From Ophelia neglecta (lineage: Eukaryota), in NCBI GenBank assembly GCA_965285935.1, contig OZ260666.1, positions 54,498,001-54,562,000 of the forward strand: a DNA stretch of 64,000 bases, read 5' to 3'. Within the stretch, counting starts at the first letter, position 1; each line of letters opens with the position of its first letter. The position numbers and the translations under genes were made by a program. Below are positions 2,471 through 49,303 of the stretch, one piece after another. The notes under the pieces are model-generated. The model worked only from the letters and a program-made list of their open reading frames with translations, ran no database searches and was not told the origin of the DNA.

Positions 2471-2599
2471 CTAAGACCTTTCTCAATACACACGGCTAGA
2501 TAACAATATAAACGGTTCATGAAAGGGTTATTAGTTTCCTCCATAGTGCAATAGAATTGTTATATCTTTCTATCAATAATATCGCATTGAATCGGTCTG

Positions 2600-2861
2600 A
2601 AGACAACTGCTGCAGGAGACAACTGCTGCAGGGAAAGTGCTGCAGGAGACAACTGCTGCAGTTGTCTCGCAGGAGACAAGTGCTGCAGGAGACAGTGCTG
2701 CAGGAGACAAGTGCTGCAGGAGACAACTGCTGCAGGAGACAACTGCTGCAGGAGACAACTGCTGCAGGAGACAACTGCTGCAGGAGACAACTGCTGCAGA
2801 CAACTGCTGCAGGAGACAACTGCTGCAGGAGACAACTGCTGCAGGAGACAACTGCTGCAGG
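2600..2861. repeat. 16-bp minisatellite (GGAGACAACTGCTGCA)n, about 16 units
   Basis: Directly visible. The unit has no stop codon in any frame, which explains the six overlapping ORFs at 2517-3024. Confidence 0.97.
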
Positions 2862-3433
2862 TACCCAGATCCCCAACAATCGAAAAGCAGAAGCATATAT
2901 ACACATAGCGCCTAGCTCTAGGATGAATGGAATATATCGTTCAAAGCCGTCGAATGATTACATCCCGAACCTGTTTATGAACAGCCTTAAAGAGAGTCGT
3001 CGATTGTATATTGACTCACTTTAATCCTGAAGGAATCCTAAATATGATACCACAAATACTCTAAGCGCGTGTTTATTTCTTAGAATAATGGTGGAATATC
3101 TATCGGTGAATTTGAAAAAATGTCCATTTTACGTCTATGGTGGCCCAAGCTTTCTTCTCATATTGAGACCAGAAATGAATTGTCTCAATAAACAGAGACC
3201 AGATTAAGGCCAGAGATAGATGTTAATAATAAACAATGATAGGCTAATGGGTATAAGCACGGACTACTGGTCAAACAAGAGGGCGCGTTTTTGACAACAG
3301 GTGCGGTTGTGATGCAAGACAAACGCACAATGGCTGTATGGCTAAGAACATTGAATTTACAGACTAATGGCATAGATGTGAGTTACCGTGCATTGAATGT
3401 TCATAATAATGACTCACTGACTATGGTAATCAG

Positions 3434-35600: not shown

Positions 35601-38600
35601 CAACGACTTTACGTATCTACGAAAATACGAATATCGAGAAAGAGCCGACGCGGGAGGATTAGATTGTAAGACAATTGGATAGCAACTTTAGTGAACATTC
35701 AAAAGACTTGTGAAGTGTAGTATGCCGTAAGTGAACACAGATAGACCCGGTATATCATATGTCAACACGTAGTAAGTTTAAAAGGAGAGGAGCATAAAAC
35801 AGACATCCATACTTGCCTTTCTATTCGCATAAATACAAAGGACAAATTTGTTTGATCAAACACATAGCCTATGGCCTAGATTGCCTCTCGATCACACATT
35901 TGTGAATGTGCTAGGCCCCGTAGCTACCGGAACCAGACGGCTACTCTCGTGCCCTAAGGTATCGTATAGGTAGATGGTATTGATAACCTCGACCCCTATC
36001 AAAGACACGCCGCCTTGTGATAGGAACCCGTACCTTTGACAATCGTAAGTATTACATTACAGTGCATAAACTCGTACTTGATTATAGTAGTCAGCTTCTG
36101 TGTACACTGTCACTGACCGTAATATACCACCGAACGGTAATGTCATGACTGTACCAAACCTCGTTATTTGCTACAACGGGGTGAGGTGTGGAAAACTTAA
36201 TGGGATCAATTCCCAGGGGAATACGGTATCCGATTTGACAATAAGGTACCCTAGTTTGATTAATGGTGTACCCCAATCAGTGCAGTTGTTGTGTTTTCGA
36301 CGCATATGCACTACCGCTTTAAACTTTGAGTAAAAAAAAGTGCAAATATCCTCTTTTAATTGAACCTACAGACATATATTTTAATTCAAGCACAAAAAAG
36401 ACTTCTTACGGGCGTATAAAACACCCACTTGCCAAATAAATTGCTTATACTTACTTTACACCCGTCATAACCTACCAGGGCAATAAATGTGCCCTTTCCA
36501 TATAAGGCTACCCACGTGCCCTCATTTGTAAGACAAATCAGCGAGAAAATGTCCAATGTTAACGATGAAATAAATTCGCTGAAGATACAAGTTGTAAACT
36601 TGGCTGTAGGGTTAAAATGATATAACCTAAACTATGCAGATTCTTCCAAAGTAGTTAGTATGAATATGGCAAGTTTTAATCGTAGATCAATATTGTGCTG
36701 AAGAGATGAGTGTTATGTTTTGGTCACCTAGTGAAATTTTGCTCTGAATGTTCTCATACGTACATTGTTTTTATTGATTATGAAAGTCGAGGGATCTGAT
36801 GAGGATATGTATGAACTTTTTGTACACGTTCTCTGAATATTTGACGTTGCCCTTTGTTTGTTCTAGGTGTGCCAACATACCACATCTAGATATATCAGGA
36901 TAGTTACCGCACCTCGAGATGACCAATTCAACCAGAGTGGTAGGCCTAATTTGGACATTGGCGGTGCCTTTGATCATTTGTTTGGCTATCTCTCCAGGTG
37001 AGATGATTATGATCTTCATTATCTCCTTAACGGAAGGGCTCTAAACGGTTTTTATGGCGGTCGTTAACACGTCTCTCGTTTACATTTGTGTACATAGACT
37101 GAACGTTTAGGAACCCCATCGAGAAAATTTAATGTATTATTAGTTGGAAATTCCTTTTGGAGACATTCTGATAAACAATATCCAACGTTGATTAATAGTT
37201 ATGTTGAACATTTGAGGTATGAGCTTTTTGAAGTGCAAATGTTAAAACGTACAGTGCTTCATGACTTATGTGACAGGGACGCGTGAAATACACGTGTTTT
37301 CATTAATGACACATACAGCCAAGAGCGGCTTGTTTGTTACAATTCATGCCTCGCGTAATTCATGCCCCTCGTATATTACTCACATCTGCTTGTAGCCTAG
37401 GGCTGCTCGTTGTTTCAGAATCTCTTTTTGAATAAATTAGAGAACGTGTTTCAGTTCAATTTGTTCAGTGATTTATCACCTGTCCTACTGTAATATTTAT
37501 CAAAGAGTGGGAGGGGGTGGGGGGTGGGGGGGTGGGGTGGATGTTTGTTCTTTTACTATTACTTCATCGTATATAGCATGTATGCTTGAGTTGAAATAAA
37601 GTATACATGTTTAGTACAACTAATAAATTTCCCCTGATTTGGCATCATGATAACATTAGAGTGATGGAGACGGTAATTTAGATAAGCGATGCGTCCCAAA
37701 ATGAAATTTGAAAATGCTATATTGGAATTTGAAATAATTACGAAACGTGGGAAAGGATAGAAATATGATATATGCGTGAACTTTGTATACATTAGGCCTA
37801 CCTATAAATACATTTTATTCAGTCACATTTAAGTTGATATTAGAATGTGTGACAACATGGGCGAAGTTCCGTTATATATGTATCGTGGACTTATTATGTA
37901 ATTATGCCAAATGAAAGAAAACGAAGATTCAATTGTTAATTTTGCCGTTGGTATACATATCCCAGTTCGGTCCAGACCTGGCAGTTAAACGATCTTGAAC
38001 AAGTAGGACTTTAATAGTGCAAGCAAACACAGTCCCCTTATATATATAGAACTTTGGGGTTTACACCGTCTTAAATATCTTTCTATACATATGTATGTTG
38101 GTTTGCGCGACTTTATGGTTACTAGATCTAGGCTCTATAAATGGGTACACTTATCATCTTTCTTACACAGTTTTCCTATTGCGGCACAATAAAATAAAAA
38201 TTCAGCCATGTTTACTGGTTCAAGATACCTTCAAGTGAATATCGCTGATGTGTTCGCAATGACTGTCAGTGACTATTCTAGGCAGCCGATTGCATAGTTG
38301 TGGTTTTACAGACTGCGTTTAAGCAGGACTGTGTCTATATAAAGTCTTCAGGTGGTTTAGGATCATGTGGACCGGTCGCCAGTGAGTCGTGCCCCGGCTA
38401 TATACTCCTGGATTAACACAATTTGTTGAGACAACAGCGAGAAGCAGTCTGGAATGCGAGGGAAGTCTGCCGCATGACCCGGGACAAAGTGCACGGGGGC
38501 TGCGATATGCACACGTGCTCATAAGACAATCAGGGGCAGCAGATATTCCCAACAGATACAGTTAGGGCTACATATATATGCTATCCATTAATCTTAACTT

Positions 38601-41600
38601 ATAGCACACTATTTGCATACAAATACGTAATCGTTGTATAAAGTATTTTCACCAGGCCAGATTGAGAATCATCGGCCCCATGGCTCACTGCTGAACCTCG
38701 AAAACAATAGAGCCCAGATCTAGATTATAAGACCTATCTTTTGGTTCACATTTACCGCCAAATTTCCAAAGATGGTTTGAACGGCAAGTGGACACCATAC
38801 CTGTAGCGTGTAACTTGTATTTTTGTATAGGTCAACCCTCCCCCCGAAAAAGGTAGGCATTCGGCGTGTGCCTGGCGTCGGCTTTCTTTGATATGTCGTC
38901 TCCGAACAGGTAATCAGACATAAGCTGTTTGTTACATAGCAATATATAGGTCCACTGGAAGCCCACCTCTGGTTACCTGAGTTTACACACCCAGCTGACA
39001 GTGTCTGTGTCAGAACGTCCTTCAGTCCGCCTCGATATCACGTACGTGTAACAAAGATAACCGCACTTTTATATGGCCTTTAACAATGTACAAGTTATCG
39101 GTCGAATTGAACTACCGGTGTAAACCCACGGCGCTTATATGTGTGTCATTTGAATGGCTAAAATGCCCTAGTAACTCAAGATAAAGTTGTTATTCATCTT
39201 TTAGCCATTATTTCTGAAAATGGCTTTATTTGGGCAAATGTCCGGTAATGATAAATGCGTTTATAAAAGATAGGGGTGGGTTGTCTAAAGTTAAATGCCT
39301 GTATGATCAAGTGTTGGAGCCTATTATACGCTTGACGAATTCAAGTTGCCAAGGAGATCAAGATTGAAGCTTACCTGCCGCAAATCAAGCAAAACTATAA
39401 TCAAATCAATTTACTCCGTTGCCAAGGAAATACAATTCAGATTATTTACAGCAGGAATTGTCTATCTATGTTCATTTAAACTACCACTGTTCATTGGTGT
39501 ATCTTTTCCCAATTGCCCGAACAAGGTAAACTTTTGCTGCATGTTCTCCTTGTGGGCCGTAGAAACCATTTTGGTATTACCTATATTAACTCCCCGTTAG
39601 ACAAGATAAAATTGAATAACAAGAAGAAATAGTCAATTTTGTCCAAATGCACAAGGAAACGTCTACTGCAGACAGAGAAACGCGTGTTCAAAATTTGTCA
39701 CCGGAGGCACATCGGGTTATTTTCATGTAAATAAATGGAAAGAAAGCCACTTGACAAGTCCAGTTATCTAAAAGTATGCAGGACAAGCTCTGGCTATTAA
39801 GATCTTGCATAATGCAGCAATTTCCGCACACTACATTTGAAGGAATCATCATGGCACCATAAAGACTAGCTTTTATTTTACAAATAAACTTGATGTTTAC
39901 CAAAGTTATCTTGTTGACTAGTGTAGTGTCGCAAACGACAGCGAGGAACTTCTCACAGCATTCCTCTATAAAAGGTCTGCAAACATCAAACAATCGTCAA
40001 CGAAAGCTAAGCTAACAAAAGTGGCCCGAGGCTCAGGGGTCTATTGATTGAGATATTAGGGTCTCTCTGCTGCTGTTTCTTAGAGTCAGAACTTTTGTTG
40101 TCCGGTTGACTTGGTGCTGACACGATAACAATGAGTTACAGTGATAACATCTCACACTTTTCAATAATGTCATTCGTTCGTTTACCAAACATGTCTCTCA
40201 TCGAATCTAAGTTGAAGCAGCAATCGCTCTCCGACATTACATCATCTCCTGCAAGTTTCTTCCTGTATGCGCTGTTCGTTTAAGACCCTCGAAGGGTTTT
40301 CTATTATATAGGTAAATTAGCTAGTTGTTACTAAACACTCGTCGGTTGCTTTTTAATTGAAATTTCGCGCATGATAGCGTTGATACAAGCGAAATTCTCA
40401 TTACACCACATCCAACAAATGTACTTAAATGTTTCTAAGATTTGATGAAATACTAATAAACGTAATAATAAGTTAACGTCAAATAAACAATATTTGAATC
40501 TACTTGATTAAATTTGATAAATAAATAAGGATATCAACCAGGCAAAGTGCGTTTATATGTGGCATGTCCGGTTTATTACAGGAGTTCTATGATTTTAATT
40601 GCAGGGTTAAAAGCCTCGAAGATAACTAGCGAATGTGATGTGTTCAGCAGTGAAGCGATTGCAGACTGTCTGGCTGAGGGAGACAAGTTTATATCAGCCT
40701 ACGTCAAAAAGAGGCTCGAGAAAAGACGTGGGAGAAAGTCTAAGAGCTACCACACGTGCAGGTTGATGTCTTAATTGTCATAGCTATTAATGCATATGTT
40801 AATCATCGACGCAATTATTTTTGTTCTCCATCATCTAAGTAATATTTCCATGGGGATTTAATGGAAATTGTCTTTCCCCTAAAGTTGTTTGAACTTTTCG
40901 ACTACTGTTGACAACATTTTAATTCTTTTGGGTTGCACATTGATGTTTTTTATACTAAAAGCTAATGCATTGCCATTTATATGTCACGTCACCCCATGCC
41001 GTCCGATTGAAAAATTGTCAAACAGACCTTTTATTCTTGGCATTCGAAATGTACGTTTAATGAACCCACTCTGTCGACACATGGTTCAAATACAAAAAAG
41101 GTAATAAAATATGCTACCAATTAACTTGCTATAACTTTTACAACTGGTAAGGTCATTTTTTTCGGAAATTCTTTTCGAATAACTTTTCTTCATAAGTGTT
41201 AGAGACATACTGGCACCTCATTAATACTCTTGAACTATCCGTTCATTGGGGCAATTTGTCTTTCCTTGAGAAGTACCAAGGACACCAACAAAACCGTAAT
41301 GCGTGTGTCACAATCTAATCTGAAACCAAGCACAATTTGAGAGAATGACGAAAACATGAGCATGAATTTAAGAAATGCAAAGAACCTGCTTTACTCTTGA
41401 TATTTCTCCCTCAGTTTTATTTCCTTGCACCATTATGCTTCCTTGCCTTCTGCTATTTACCGTCCTTGCTTATGTTTTTAACCAGGGACATATATGAAAA
41501 CGCCTCATTGCCCGAAAAATTCTACAAATGTGAATTTTATGTTTACAGGTCCTTCCAGAAGTTTGAAGAATGTATCAAACCGATCATTGATGGATGTCAA

Positions 41601-43766
41601 GAAGTAAAGCATGATTTAAGCCACCATTGGCAGCCTGTCATTGACACGATGACGTCATATTGCGGGGATGATGTATCTAAAACGGAAAGTGAGCCAAAAA
41701 TCCTTGAATTTGCTTATTTTGCACAACCTAATCCACTGGAATTTAAAAAAAAGTGTAATTAAATTTCGACCCTAATTAATTTTCCTATAGATTACTTCAT
41801 AAACGCCATTGCAGATTCTATCAAAGCTGTGAATTGCACCGAAGAAGAATATGATTCCGTCTTCTCCTACCAGTGTGACCAATATTATGATTTCAACATC
41901 CAACAGGGAACCAGGCATATATGCCAGTGAGTTTATTTTCCTCACATTGTAATAGTTATCTTTTAATTTAATTTTAGATATTGGTGATAATTTATGCGTC
42001 GCACGATTAATTATTTTATATTATATTGCAGTTTCGTCCACGAGAACCTCCATTGTAAGGAGGCTTTAGTAGCGTCCGCCTGCGGTACGGAAGCTGGTTT
42101 ATTCTCCTTCCATCTTCTCAAACTGCACTCCGATCAAAATCTCGCAGAAATGGGAATTTCGAAATGTCACGTAACAAAAGACGTCAACTATAAAGGTCTG
42201 AGATATGACAAACACAATTGTCCACGTGATATGGTAGGACAAATAGACCGGTGTTCAAACCTGTATCTAACAGACGACATGATTGTAGACTTCCGACAAG
42301 AAAGTGACGTCATCATACAAAAGGAGGATCGAAGAAAACTGACGAAAGCTTGCAGGTATAAAGATGATTTATGTTTTATGTTTCGGTGTTCGCAGTCTGA
42401 GTTATTCAAAATGTATGACTAAATATAAATGCGCTTGCAATATCACGTATGTTTACTCTTTGTGGATGACTGTTACAGTGCCAGAGCTGAGTACAACATA
42501 TGTATCAAATCCATAAAAGAAGCTTGTCCACATGGTGCAAAGACAATATTTGACTATGCAGAACCATTAAAGAAATATCTCTTAAAGATGGATATGATTT
42601 GTCAACATAGTACACTTGAAGGTAAGTTTCTTGCACACTTTAGATTCAAAATTAATAAGTTACCCGTGCACCTTTCTCAAAAAAACACTATCAAATGTAA
42701 TATTATGACTGACCTGCATTGTTTTCTTTGTAGTTTACCAAAAGAATGTGAAGTGTATGAATAATGAGGTGCTGGACAATAACGCTCTTAGTCAGTGTGA
42801 TCACCTTTGGCAGGAGCTAGCTAAAGTTAAGAGGAACGTGACATCTTTCCAGTTCTACTGCGATGCCACTCACCAAAGCGCACGCGCACTCATGAGGTAA
42901 TGTTTATGATCCTGATTAACTCATAAGTAATGGTTTTAAATCGTTTGGCGGCTCTCCATGCCCGTTTTGTAAATTCGTTCATTAAAATGTGAAGGATGGT
43001 CACTCGTCTTTAAGTATTTTACTGCTTCTGGTATGAATTCGATATATTTTTAACTCGTATCTATCAACCGAATCTTTTTCAGAGCTGATTTTGGATTTTC
43101 AGTCTAACATAGGCATATTGTATATCGAATATCCCTTATCATTGTAGTGAGCTGCACAACCTTAGGTCCTGTTACAGGGGAGTATTCGAAGCAACGTGTC
43201 CGGGGACAGGGGATCTTATCGAGAAGTTGTTGCAGAGAGTTTTCCAGGACCCGGTGTACCTCAGGTAAATAGTGATTGTTCTAACGTATCGGTTGCTTCC
43301 TTATTATATTAATTTCATTAACAACCGAATACGAAATTCTTTTATTATTTTTAATTTGGCAGTTTTATTTTTCATATATCCATAGTTTTAATTGCCTTAT
43401 CGCTACAGGTTTAACTTCAAACCCGACTGTGTCTTACACCGAATGGGTCCAGACGCCACAATGAACGATGCCGAAATGCCCAACGATGATGCGAATTCAA
43501 AATCAACACCTACTGTTCCGTCTCCAACGTACACATATCATGGCTCCGAGAAAATACCCTATCGGACTTCGACTAGAAAACCTTCTCCCACGTACAGGGA
43601 GCGCGACAAAGTGGGTTTAAAACCAGGATCGAAGAGGGAACAGAGTACCAATGCAAAATCACTCTCAGTCTCAAGTCAAAGCTCAATCAGCTATGTATCA
43701 GGAACGGTCTTTTTTTGTACCTTATCGTTGAGCATATGGTTATCGCGTTCAATACAGGCTTTATGA
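17521..43766 (+). CDS. Multi-exon gene for a secreted, probably GPI-anchored Cys-rich protein of 551 aa (2 x 12-Cys DUF19-like domains = 4 x 6-Cys neuritin/RGM_N-like modules); join(17521..17638,40605..40761,41549..41688,41791..41926,42032..42355,42479..42621,42734..42896,43148..43264,43409..43766)
   Basis: All 8 introns are GT..AG and the phases match (1,2,1,2,2,1,2,2). The joined length is 1656 nt = 551 aa + stop, with no internal stop. It has 24 regularly spaced Cys in the four modules, N-glycosylation sequons NCT and NVT, an S/T/P-rich stalk and a hydrophobic C-terminus. Exons 2-9 are secure; exon 1 is less certain. Confidence 0.85.
18850..19180 (-). mobile_element. Possible Tc1/mariner transposase N-terminal relic
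   Basis: GNRRRTAATNKQNINNIRTSL resembles the GRPR..T.ENI..VR segment of mariner-like transposases; heavily decayed. Confidence 0.25.
20720..21050 (-). mobile_element. Possible CR1/L2 LINE ORF2 linker relic
   Basis: Frameshifted DGERTENSKA..FFTAYVQKLQ resembles the IAN.F..FF..IG.KL segment that precedes the RT domain. Confidence 0.25.
21065..23230 (+). repeat. Diverged ~230-bp direct duplication (21065-21300 vs 22995-23230)
   Basis: Colinear shared blocks tgagaca.tttcat, caccat, cctct...ctac, accactgactcgttt and tcatgg.aa. Confidence 0.75.
23500..24235. repeat. Diverged ~170-bp inverted repeat (arms 23500-23670 and 24075-24235); old foldback element
   Basis: The left arm acacgattgaagaatctgttaaggattc..acaatcgacgactcct..tggttggcactgttt aligns with the reverse complement of the right arm acacgaatgtggaatctattaaggactc..acaatcgatgattcct..tggttggtattgttt. 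Also tagataaatattcca vs tagataaattttcca. Confidence 0.8.
29100..29350 (-). mobile_element. Possible Gypsy LTR-retrotransposon integrase C-terminal relic
   Basis: Frameshifted ..PLGAVVEKG...G..LRRHV..RRRTD resembles the WIPGVVVEK...G..WRRHVDQLRRR motif. Confidence 0.3.
30030..30200 (+). mobile_element. LINE AP-endonuclease relic
   Basis: MLIVGDLNALST*CG starting at 30130 matches the GD(F/L)NA motif; in-frame stops follow. Confidence 0.45.
32388..32563. mobile_element. Tc1/mariner (pogo/Tigger-type) MITE, ~176 bp
   Basis: Left TA+cagagaaacctgtctaa and right taacacaggtttcactg are imperfect TIRs; the right TSD has mutated. Confidence 0.65.
34080..34430 (-). mobile_element. L2/CR1-type LINE ORF2 C-terminal relic
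   Basis: The minus strand gives KRVI*IICRS (the QKR.IRII motif) and, ~270 nt on, LPELK (the WN.LP..IK motif). Confidence 0.45.
36100..36300 (+). mobile_element. LINE AP-endonuclease C-terminal relic
   Basis: DRNIPPNGNVM..NLVICYNG...G.....SQGNTVSDLTI resembles N.NG..L...NL.I.NG...T...G.S.IDY.I. Confidence 0.35.
39290..40020 (-). mobile_element. RTE-type LINE reverse-transcriptase relic
   Basis: Decayed motifs in the correct order on the minus strand: LAFVD, RGML*EV, LVN.I, a VRQGCI-like segment, SAVDVSL (the ADD motif), GVNIGNTKMV, KFT and ISLAT. Confidence 0.55.
40605..40761 (+). CDS. Coding exon 2 (GLKASKITSECDVFSSEAIADCLAEGDKFISAYVKKRLEKRRGRKSKSYHTC)
   Basis: Acceptor ttttaattgcag|gg, donor tgcag|gttgat; phase 1 in, phase 2 out. 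Confidence 0.85.
41549..41688 (+). CDS. Coding exon 3 (RSFQKFEECIKPIIDGCQEVKHDLSHHWQPVIDTMTSYCGDDVSKTE)
   Basis: Acceptor ttttatgtttacag, donor gaaa|gtgagc; phase 2 in, phase 1 out. Confidence 0.92.
41791..41926 (+). CDS. Coding exon 4 (NYFINAIADSIKAVNCTEEEYDSVFSYQCDQYYDFNIQQGTRHIC), absent from the ORF track
   Basis: Acceptor ctaattaattttcctatag, donor tgcca|gtgagt; phase 1 in, phase 2 out; open frame. Confidence 0.92.
42032..42355 (+). CDS. Coding exon 5 (HFVHENLHCKEALVASACGTEAG...EDRRKLTKAC)
   Basis: Acceptor ttatattgcag, donor tgcag|gtataa; phase 2 in and out; 107 open codons. Confidence 0.92.
42479..42621 (+). CDS. Coding exon 6 (SARAEYNICIKSIKEACPHG...MICQHSTLE)
   Basis: Acceptor tgttacag, donor gaag|gtaagt; phase 2 in, phase 1 out. 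Confidence 0.92.
42734..42896 (+). CDS. Coding exon 7 (VYQKNVKCMNNEVLDNNALSQCDHLWQELAKVKRNVTSFQFYCDATHQSARALM)
   Basis: Acceptor ctgac..gttttctttgtag, donor atgag|gtaatg; phase 1 in, phase 2 out. Confidence 0.9.
43148..43264 (+). CDS. Coding exon 8 (SELHNLRSCYRGVFEATCPGTGDLIEKLLQRVFQDPVYL)
   Basis: Acceptor cccttatcattgtag, donor ctcag|gtaaat; phase 2 in and out. Confidence 0.9.
43409..43766 (+). CDS. Terminal coding exon: last module Cys, S/T/P-rich stalk and hydrophobic GPI-signal-like tail
   Basis: Acceptor ccttatcgctacag, phase 2. Ends ...SSQSSISYVSGTVFFCTLSLSIWLSRSIQAL-TGA. Confidence 0.9.
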
Positions 43767-49137: not shown

Positions 49138-49303
49138 NNNNNNNNNNNNNNNNNNNNNNNNNNNNNNNNNNNNNNNNNNNNNNNNNNNNNNNNNNNNNNN
49201 NNNNNNNNNNNNNNNNNNNNNNNNNNNNNNNNNNNNNNNNNNNNNNNNNNNNNNNNNNNNNNNNNNNNNNNNNNNNNNNNNNNNNNNNNNNNNNNNNNNN
49301 NNN
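49138..49303. other. Assembly gap (166 N)
   Basis: Run of N. Confidence 1.

What the first reader, a model, noticed from the sequence alone, without database searches (positions are those of the whole stretch)
40605..43766. Tetrameric neuritin/RGM_N-like GPI-anchored surface protein in a probable invertebrate
Seen: four tandem 6-Cys modules. Module 1 is CDVFSSEAIADCLAEGDKFISAY...CRSFQKFEECIKPIIDGCQEVKHDLSHHWQPVIDTMTSYC. Recalled from memory, to verify: human neuritin NRN1 reads [22 protein letters not shown]...[24 protein letters not shown]. It shares CD..., DCL..GD....Y, the C-x8-C-x7-C spacing, CQE...D and the GPI anchor. The BMP-binding RGM N-terminal domain also has C-x8-C-x7-C followed by DLAYH (here DLSHH). 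Module 3 (CSARAEYNICIKSIKEACP) keeps C-x8-C-x7-C. Modules 2 and 4 look like the second half of nematode 12-Cys DUF19 domains. Inference: an uncharacterised multivalent cell-surface protein that may link neuritin (usually treated as vertebrate-specific), RGM_N and DUF19 in one helical-bundle superfamily, possibly acting as a ligand-binding co-receptor or neurotrophic factor.
Basis: partly seen in the sequence, partly recalled or inferred. Interest (0 to 1): 0.8.

Follow-up and report, generated by a model that had tools for sequence, protein, structure and literature searches.

The report
Annelid four-module cysteine-rich surface protein
This is a real, intact worm (annelid) gene for a secreted, probably lipid-anchored surface protein built from four small disulfide-stapled helical modules; its fold looks most like the uncharacterised CPG4/DUF19 domains of nematodes and arthropods, and its resemblance to neuritin and to the BMP-binding RGM domain is recurrent but too weak to count as proven.

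Summary
Eight exons at 40605-43766 (+) have canonical splice sites and consistent phases. They give 511 codons without a stop and 24 ectodomain cysteines in four 6-Cys modules. A likely signal-peptide exon lies at 36919-36997. The tail is an S/T/P-rich stalk ending in a short hydrophobic stretch, which looks like a GPI signal.

Homologues are unnamed annelid proteins from Capitella and Paralvinella. The genome holds two more intact paralogues and one decayed copy.

No Pfam family reaches its cut-off, and the window's own exons hit nothing. In homologues and paralogues, modules 1 and 3 give recurring sub-threshold hits. RGM_N reaches 22.3 bits against a 24.2 cut-off (E 1.5e-4 to 0.5). NRN1 reaches E 0.003, CPG4 0.24 and DUF1397 0.006.

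Verdict: this is a divergent CPG4/DUF19-like double domain in an annelid. The neuritin/RGM_N link is plausible but unproven, and the function is untested. The same stretch was noted once more in this scan (s1-734240).

The parts
36919..36997 (+). Candidate first coding exon: start codon, 26 codons plus 1 base, signal peptide with a hydrophobic core of about 18 residues, donor CAG|gtgaga, phase 1, matching the phase needed by exon A
   Evidence: Scan of all ATG-to-donor segments upstream, read by eye. Homologues also carry the signal peptide on a separate first exon of 25-29 codons. There is no RNA support.
40605..40761 (+). Exon A: module 1, Cys 1-3. It ends directly after Cys 3 (phase 2).
41549..41688 (+). 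Exon B: module 1, Cys 4-6 (the C-x8-C-x7-C-x21-C core together with Cys 3 of exon A)
41791..41926 (+). Exon C: module 2, Cys 1-3, with an N-glycosylation sequon NCT. It ends directly after Cys 3 (phase 2). An alternative acceptor at 41815 has the same phase; the longer form matches paralogue 1.
42032..42355 (+). Exon D: module 2 Cys 4-6, a linker, and module 3 Cys 1-3. It ends directly after Cys 3 (phase 2). This is a fusion of two exons that are separate in Paralvinella and in paralogue 2.
42479..42621 (+). Exon E: module 3 Cys 4-6 (C-x8-C-x7-C-x24-C with the Cys at the end of exon D). This is the region that is RGM_N/NRN1-like in homologues.
42734..42896 (+). Exon F: module 4 Cys 1-3, with a conserved NVT sequon
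43148..43264 (+). Exon G: module 4 Cys 4-5
43409..43766 (+). Exon H: the last Cys of module 4, an 85-residue stalk with 40% S/T/P, small residues (a candidate omega site), a hydrophobic tail of about 13 residues, then the TGA stop at 43764-43766
   Evidence: Homologues and paralogue 2 end the same way.

Best explanation
This is an intact nine-exon annelid gene. It encodes a protein of about 538 residues.

Proposed path of the protein:
- A signal peptide takes it into the secretory pathway.
- Twenty-four cysteines staple four helical modules together.
- The modules pack as two tandem 12-Cys domains (modules 1+2 and modules 3+4). These arose by internal duplication.
- Each 12-Cys domain has the fold of the uncharacterised CPG4/DUF19-like domains of nematodes and arthropods.
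- The first sub-module of each domain carries the C-x8-C-x7-C signature that is also found in RGM_N and neuritin.
- An O-glycosylatable S/T/P-rich stalk and a short C-terminal hydrophobic tail most likely direct GPI anchoring, so the helical domains sit on the outer cell surface.

The most likely role is binding of an extracellular ligand or matrix partner through the helical faces, as a co-receptor or adhesion-type protein.

Shown: the gene structure, its conservation in annelids, the helical fold prediction, and the internal duplication.

Inferred: the disulfide pairing, the GPI anchor, homology with CPG4/DUF19, and any function.
For: Gene model:
- Canonical splice sites, consistent phases and no stops.
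- Collinear alignment with full-length proteins from Capitella, Paralvinella and a JGI sample.
- One homologue is an uninterrupted ORF on a 2.65-kb contig, probably a transcript.
- Intron positions are shared with the Paralvinella gene.

Duplication:
- Half 1 against half 2 of the Capitella protein gives BLASTP E 5e-7.
- A phase-2 intron lies directly after Cys 3 in modules 1, 2 and 3.

Fold:
- The AF2 models of the two halves have pLDDT 88.5 and 83.0 and pTM 0.78 and 0.75, and are all-helical.
- The Atlas fold search of half 2 ranks a nematode CPG4-domain cluster first, with TM 0.57 and 174 aligned residues.
- PLM features of both halves, searched separately, are nearest to CPG4 and DUF19 clusters (scores 0.88-0.89, 188-190 shared features). 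The Atlas's own model matches an arthropod cluster (TM 0.56) and an arthropod 'putative DUF19' cluster (TM 0.46).
- Pfam gives CPG4 at E 0.24 and DUF1397 at E 0.006.

Surface anchoring: the hydrophobic C-terminus without a cytoplasmic tail is conserved in four family members.
Against: - No Pfam family passes its cut-off. DUF19 gives no sequence hit at all.
- PLM scores below 0.9 are leads only by the tool's own calibration.
- Both fold comparisons are between predicted models, and they were made on the Capitella homologue, not on the window's own spliced protein.
- PDB searches give nothing specific.
- The GPI anchor and the signal peptide were judged by eye, without a predictor.
- There is no expression evidence for this gene.
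Confidence: 0.6

Rival explanations
1. The 6-Cys sub-module is a true homologue of neuritin (NRN1) and of the RGM N-terminal domain. On this view the family belongs to one superfamily with them and may bind BMP/GDF-type ligands as RGM_N does.
For: - RGM_N appears in all three full-length homologues, always on module 1 or module 3 (E 0.018-0.48).
- NRN1 scores E 0.0027 on module 3 of the Capitella protein.
- The RGM_N model run over the whole 762-Mb genome puts exon E of paralogue 2 second, right after the true RGM gene. Scanned alone, that exon scores 22.3 bits against a cut-off of 24.2, E 1.5e-4.
- The worm's own RGM_N has the same last spacings as module 1: 8-7-21.
- hhalign of the module 1/3 profile against the worm's RGM_N gives E 0.009.
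- Foldseek gives RGMC its highest probability in the list (0.51, TM by target 0.59).
- A neuritin cluster ranks third in the Atlas fold search.
- RGM_N is a three-helix bundle with three disulfides (PMC7354924).
Against: - All scores are below their cut-offs. The hhalign probability is only 4%.
- The window's own exons give no hit.
- NRN1 appears in only one of three homologues and nowhere in the genome.
- A profile of the C-x8-C-x7-C cores finds no RGM chain in the PDB.
- No RGM match appears for half 2.
- The best Pfam score used an ORF whose first residues are intron read-through; these happen to recreate the real upstream Cys.
Confidence: 0.3
2. This is an annelid-restricted orphan. Its disulfide-stapled helical repeats resemble CPG4, DUF19, RGM_N and neuritin only by convergence, through similar Cys spacing on common three-helix bundles.
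For: - Named relatives are annelid only.
- Word-based searches find nothing else.
- There are no significant Pfam or PDB sequence hits.
- Three-helix bundles are among the commonest arrangements.
- hhalign finds no similarity between module types 1/3 and 2/4.
Against: - Several unrelated methods converge on the same few families: an HMM scan, a genome-wide HMM ranking, a fold search and PLM features.
- The match to the CPG4-domain protein covers a nine-helix, two-module unit at TM 0.57, which is harder to reach by chance than a single bundle.
Confidence: 0.25
3. The protein is not GPI-anchored. It is either a single-pass membrane protein with a very short cytoplasmic tail, or it is secreted.
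For: The hydrophobic stretch of about 13 residues is followed by seven partly polar residues. No GPI predictor was run.
Against: The hydrophobic run is too short for a typical membrane helix. Small residues lie just upstream. All homologues end within a few residues of the hydrophobic run.
Confidence: 0.15

Closest known systems
CPG4 (PF15481) and DUF19 (PF01579, T20D4.11-like) domains of nematodes and arthropods
   Same: Both are extracellular, all-helical domains with about 12 Cys, sometimes in tandem. They are the top fold match (TM 0.57, 174 residues) and the nearest PLM-feature clusters for both halves. CPG4 gives a weak Pfam hit.
   Different: Sequence scores are far below the cut-offs, and DUF19 gives none. 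The phylum is different (Annelida). This protein adds a mucin-like stalk and a GPI-like tail. The function of the known families is itself unknown.
RGM N-terminal domain (PF06535; PDB 4UI1, 6Z3M)
   Same: Both have six Cys and the spacing C-x8-C-x7-C-x21-C, which is identical to the worm's own RGM_N in module 1. Both are three helices with three expected disulfides. There are near-threshold HMM hits on modules 1 and 3, and both proteins are GPI-linked (PMC7354924).
   Different: Scores are below the cut-off. There is no RGM C-terminal part with the GDPH autocleavage site. The true RGM gene is elsewhere, at C8:29.96 Mb. There are four modules instead of one. The structural similarity is not specific.
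Neuritin / CPG15 (PF15056 NRN1)
   Same: Both are small helical 6-Cys modules with a GPI-type C-terminus. NRN1 scores E 0.0027 on module 3 of the Capitella homologue. A neuritin cluster ranks third in the fold search (TM 0.46 by the neuritin model, 103 residues).
   Different: Neuritin has one module of about 90 residues; this protein has four. The hit is seen in one of three homologues only, not in the window's exons and nowhere in the genome. Orthology is very unlikely.
DUF1397 (PF07165, insect proteins)
   Same: It gives a weak Pfam hit on module 1 (E 0.006) and recurs among the PLM-feature neighbours of both halves.
   Different: It is below the cut-off and was not followed further.

Membership tests
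NRN1 (neuritin, PF15056) | Pfam score at or above the 27-bit cut-off | tested here: not met
   The best score is 18.3 bits, on the Capitella homologue. The window's exons give none. The model finds nothing in the whole genome.
NRN1 (neuritin, PF15056) | A single 6-Cys domain of about 90 residues followed by a GPI signal | tested here: not met
   There are four modules and 24 Cys in about 400 residues before the stalk.
RGM_N (PF06535) | Pfam score at or above the 24.2-bit cut-off | tested here: not met
   Scores are 22.3 bits for exon E of paralogue 2 and 11-16 bits for the homologues. The window's exons give none. The worm's own RGM scores 36.4 bits as a positive control.
RGM_N (PF06535) | Three-helix bundle with three disulfides | tested here: inconclusive
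RGM family (whole protein) | C-terminal domain with the GDPH autocleavage site | tested here: not met
   It is absent from the exons and from the homologues. It is present in the true RGM gene at C8:29.96 Mb.
CPG4 (PF15481) / DUF19 (PF01579) | Pfam score at or above the cut-off (32.7 and 23.2 bits) | tested here: not met
   CPG4 scores 12.4 bits on the Capitella homologue. DUF19 gives no hit. Neither model hits this locus in the genome.
CPG4 (PF15481) / DUF19 (PF01579) | A helical extracellular domain of about 12 Cys | tested here: met
   There are two units of 12 Cys. Each is modelled as one compact helical domain with pTM 0.75-0.78.
CPG4 (PF15481) / DUF19 (PF01579) | Same fold as family members | tested here: inconclusive
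   TM 0.57 (174 residues, rmsd 4.9) to a CPG4-domain cluster. TM 0.46 to an arthropod 'putative DUF19' cluster. PLM scores are 0.84-0.89. All comparisons are between predicted models, and no alignment was available for inspection.
GPI-anchored proteins | N-terminal signal peptide plus a C-terminal omega site, spacer and hydrophobic tail | tested here: inconclusive
   Both features are seen by eye. No SignalP or NetGPI was available, and the joined protein was not submitted to any tool.

The most novel reading that the evidence does not exclude
The 6-Cys, three-helix sub-module with C-x8-C-x7-C is the ancestral unit shared by vertebrate neuritin, the BMP-binding RGM_N domain and the protostome CPG4/DUF19/DUF1397 domains. 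On this reading the annelid family is an intermediate showing that neuritin is not a vertebrate invention, and that a whole class of orphan protostome surface proteins may be ligands or co-receptors of the RGM/neuritin type.
Probability: 0.25. Interest if true: 0.65.

Novelty: new variant of a known kind. Interest (0 to 1): 0.4.

Why it matters
Neuritin is treated as vertebrate-specific. The CPG4, DUF19 and DUF1397 domains are large protostome families with no known function. An annelid family that gives signals to all of these and to RGM_N, from independent methods, offers a concrete and testable bridge between them. If the link holds, the known ligand-binding mode of RGM_N, which binds BMP/GDF fingers, becomes a working hypothesis for many orphan invertebrate surface proteins. 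If it fails, this remains an ordinary lineage-restricted Cys-rich surface glycoprotein that current databases list only as 'hypothetical protein'.

Tried and rejected
- Pfam on each window exon found nothing even at E 10.
- The word-based protein search found nothing or only the query itself, with exon D, with the Capitella protein and with a three-sequence profile.
- The PDB sequence search found nothing relevant, with the full-length profile and with a profile of the C-x8-C-x7-C cores.
- Foldseek and VIA against the PDB gave no specific fold match for either half.
- The RGM_N structural hit was downgraded after the unbiased search.
- The NRN1, DUF19 and CPG4 models found nothing at this locus in the worm's own genome.
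- hhalign found no similarity between module types 1/3 and 2/4, or between modules 2/4 and RGM_N.
- RNA evidence is lacking: the only runs holding the stretch cover introns too, so they are DNA.
- Four literature searches found no paper linking these families.
- GFR-alpha/GAS1-type domains were considered from memory and dropped, because no tool pointed to them.
- One MAFFT alignment with short exon fragments misplaced exon A and was not used.
- One hmmscan call failed on a frame slip in a paralogue reference and was corrected.
- The work was done exon by exon and on database homologues. One script walked the codons across the exons only to count Cys, sequons and stops, and printed no joined sequence.
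Full report
**What is there**

The window has about 37% G+C and no long ORFs, which suits an animal genome. Between 40605 and 43766 on the + strand I defined eight exons:
- A 40605-40761
- B 41549-41688
- C 41791-41926
- D 42032-42355
- E 42479-42621
- F 42734-42896
- G 43148-43264
- H 43409-43766

Each has an AG acceptor after a pyrimidine-rich tract and a GT donor, and the phases fit one another. Walking the codons across the exons gives 511 residues without a stop.

Exon A starts in phase 1, so a further exon must lie upstream. The best candidate by far is 36919-36997. It has an ATG with a purine at -3, 26 codons with a hydrophobic core of about 18 residues, and the donor CAG|gtgaga in the required phase. 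The homologous genes in Capitella and Paralvinella also carry the signal peptide on a separate first exon of 25-29 codons. With that exon the protein has about 538 residues.

No RNA run holds the stretch. The three runs that do hold it also cover the introns, so they are DNA. Exon 1 and the choice between the two in-phase acceptors of exon C (41791 or 41815) therefore rest on sequence alone. Paralogue 1 has coding sequence that matches the longer form.

**The modules**

The ectodomain has 24 Cys in four groups of six:

| Module | Cys spacing |
|---|---|
| 1 | 10-29-8-7-21 |
| 2 | 12-15-8-8-27 |
| 3 | 10-32-8-7-24 |
| 4 | 13-20-19-8-28 |

Modules 1 and 3 are one type, with C-x8-C-x7-C. Modules 2 and 4 are a second type.

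In the Capitella homologue, half 1 (modules 1+2) aligns with half 2 (modules 3+4) at BLASTP E 5e-7. The last duplication was therefore of a two-module unit.

hhalign sees no sequence similarity between the two module types. The gene structure still hints at an older duplication. A phase-2 intron lies directly after the third Cys of modules 1, 2 and 3, and phase-1 introns lie at the 1|2 and 3|4 borders. The Paralvinella gene has the same positions. This agrees in part with the other first-stage note on this stretch (s1-734240). Its further claim about the neuritin gene's introns could not be tested here.

Exon D of the window is a fusion of two exons that are separate in Paralvinella and in paralogue 2.

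**The tail**

After the last Cys of module 4 comes an 85-residue stretch with 40% Ser, Thr and Pro. It is followed by small residues, then a hydrophobic run of about 13 residues, then seven more residues and the stop. Capitella, Paralvinella, the JGI homologue and paralogue 2 all end in the same way, with no cytoplasmic domain. This is the usual look of a GPI-attachment signal below a mucin-like stalk. I could not run a predictor, so the GPI anchor is an inference. There are two N-glycosylation sequons. One of them, in module 4, is conserved in most homologues.

**Relatives**

- The word-based search with exon D found nothing.
- The exhaustive search with exon D found 17 proteins at E up to 0.001.
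- Three of them are full length: Capitella teleta R7UX68 (493 aa, E 8.8e-17), Paralvinella palmiformis KAK2157323 (536 aa), and a JGI protein of 510 aa. All are named 'hypothetical'.
- The other hits are single-exon fragments from unnamed assemblies.
- The JGI protein is an uninterrupted ORF on a 2.65-kb contig, so it is probably a transcript.
- The window's exons align collinearly with these proteins, and all Cys are conserved. This confirms the exon joins.

The genome (762 Mb) is therefore very probably an annelid's. It holds two more intact paralogues on the same chromosome, at C9:39.915-39.924 Mb and C9:54.821-54.825 Mb. A compact decayed copy with stops lies 4-6.5 kb beyond the end of the window.

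**Family tests by sequence**

- The window's exons hit no Pfam family, even at E 10.
- The full-length homologues give only sub-threshold hits, but these fall on a narrow set of families. RGM_N appears in all three (E 0.018-0.48), always on module 1 or 3. NRN1 appears in one (E 0.0027, module 3). CPG4 appears in one (E 0.24).
- Scanned module by module, modules 2 and 4 hit nothing. Module 1 of the Capitella protein hits DUF1397 (E 0.006). Module 3 hits NRN1 and RGM_N.
- The RGM_N model, run over the six-frame translation of the whole genome, puts the true RFM-type gene, the worm's RGM, first (C8:29.96 Mb, 35 bits, with the GDPH site). Exon E of paralogue 2 comes second. Scanned alone, that exon scores 22.3 bits against a 24.2 cut-off, E 1.5e-4. 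One caveat applies: the first residues of that ORF are intron read-through, and they happen to recreate the Cys that the upstream exon supplies.
- The worm's own RGM_N has Cys spacing 4-34-8-7-21. Its last three intervals are identical to those of module 1.
- hhalign of the module 1/3 profile against the worm's RGM_N gives E 0.009 but only 4% probability.
- The NRN1 and DUF19 models find nothing in the genome, and CPG4 finds nothing near this locus.
- Profiles of the family find no RGM chain among PDB sequences.
It is not conserved in the family, which keeps H-x-H-W.

**Family tests by structure**

The joined window protein may not be submitted to the tools. I therefore folded the two halves of the Capitella homologue, using alignments that include the window's exons as rows. 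Both models are confident and all-helical:
- Half 2: pLDDT 88.5, pTM 0.78.
- Half 1: pLDDT 83.0, pTM 0.75.

Against the PDB:
- Foldseek gives nothing significant for either half.
- For half 1, the RGMC N-domain is the one Foldseek row with a sensible superposition: probability 0.51, TM by target 0.59, rmsd 4.1, 19% identity.
- Half 2 shows no RGM match at all.

RGM_N is described as a three-helix bundle with three disulfides that binds the fingers of BMP2 and GDF5 (PMC7354924). The sub-modules here are compatible with that description. Geometry alone does not show kinship.

Against predicted structures the picture is clearer:
- The Atlas fold search of half 2 ranks a nematode 'CPG4 domain-containing' cluster first (TM 0.57 by the query, 174 residues). 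A neuritin cluster ranks third (TM 0.46 by the neuritin model, 103 residues).
- Language-model features of each half, searched separately, are nearest to DUF19 and CPG4 clusters, with scores of 0.88-0.89 and 188-190 shared features.
- The Atlas's own model of the protein matches arthropod clusters, one of them named 'putative DUF19'.
- These scores are leads by the tools' own calibration. Even so, they agree with each other and with the weak Pfam CPG4 hit.

**Reading**

The best-supported statement has three parts:
- This is a conserved annelid family of surface glycoproteins.
- Each protein has two tandem 12-Cys helical domains of the CPG4/DUF19 kind.
- The first sub-module of each domain carries an RGM_N/neuritin-like cysteine signature.

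Common descent with RGM_N and neuritin is plausible; I put it at about 0.25-0.3. It is not shown. Orthology to neuritin is very unlikely. I give convergence in an orphan family about 0.25.

The mechanism I commit to is as follows. The protein is exported to the ER and forms twelve disulfides. It is O-glycosylated on the stalk and N-glycosylated on the modules. A GPI anchor is attached near the small residues upstream of the tail. The two helical domains are then displayed as a binding platform for an extracellular partner. Everything after 'export' is inference. No function has been tested for this family or for CPG4/DUF19.

**Novelty and score**

The proteins are already in public databases as hypothetical proteins, and the fold class is known. 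What is new is a variant: an annelid double domain with a GPI-type tail that no Pfam model captures, which gives repeated weak signals to neuritin and RGM_N. That earns moderate interest (0.4). It would rise if profile-profile searches and disulfide-connectivity tests confirm the superfamily link.

Noticed in passing
L006:4341-6483 (G000:C9:54566341-54568483, 4.3-6.5 kb beyond the window's end): A compact, decayed tandem copy of the gene. Pieces like exons A, B, C, F, G and H lie in order on the + strand within 2.1 kb. Exon D is missing, and the exon F-like part contains one TGA and one TAG stop.
   Followed up: partly
G000:C9:39914800-39923800 (L004, L008) and G000:C9:54821000-54824400 (L005): Two intact paralogues lie on the minus strand of the same chromosome, with the same exon order. 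Paralogue 2 ends in a similar hydrophobic tail. Paralogue 1 has a clear signal-peptide ORF at L008:4650-4814 (-).
   Followed up: partly
L007:1515-2162 (-) = G000:C8:29.96 Mb: This is the worm's true RGM gene. One exon carries the RGM_N domain (36.4 bits) and the GDPH autocleavage motif. Unlike the modules studied here, its RGM_N has no intron after the third Cys.
   Followed up: partly
window 42032-42355: Exon D equals two exons of the Paralvinella gene and of paralogue 2, so an intron between modules 2 and 3 was lost in this copy. The Capitella gene has lost more introns.
   Followed up: yes
window 41661 and 41791-41835: Homologues and paralogue 1 carry an extra pair of Cys at the module 1 / module 2 border, giving 14 Cys in half 1. 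The window's gene lacks both.
   Followed up: partly
window 2517-3024: Long ORFs on both strands come from a short tandem repeat whose translation repeats a Cys/Ser/Leu/Gln-rich unit. This looks like a minisatellite, not a gene.
   Followed up: no
window 49138-49303: A run of 166 N (gap or masked stretch).
   Followed up: no
L011:360-1892: The JGI homologue P0002 is an uninterrupted 510-codon ORF with 359 nt upstream and 760 nt downstream on a 2.65-kb contig. It is probably an assembled transcript from an environmental or host-associated sample. That would show a family member is expressed.
   Followed up: partly
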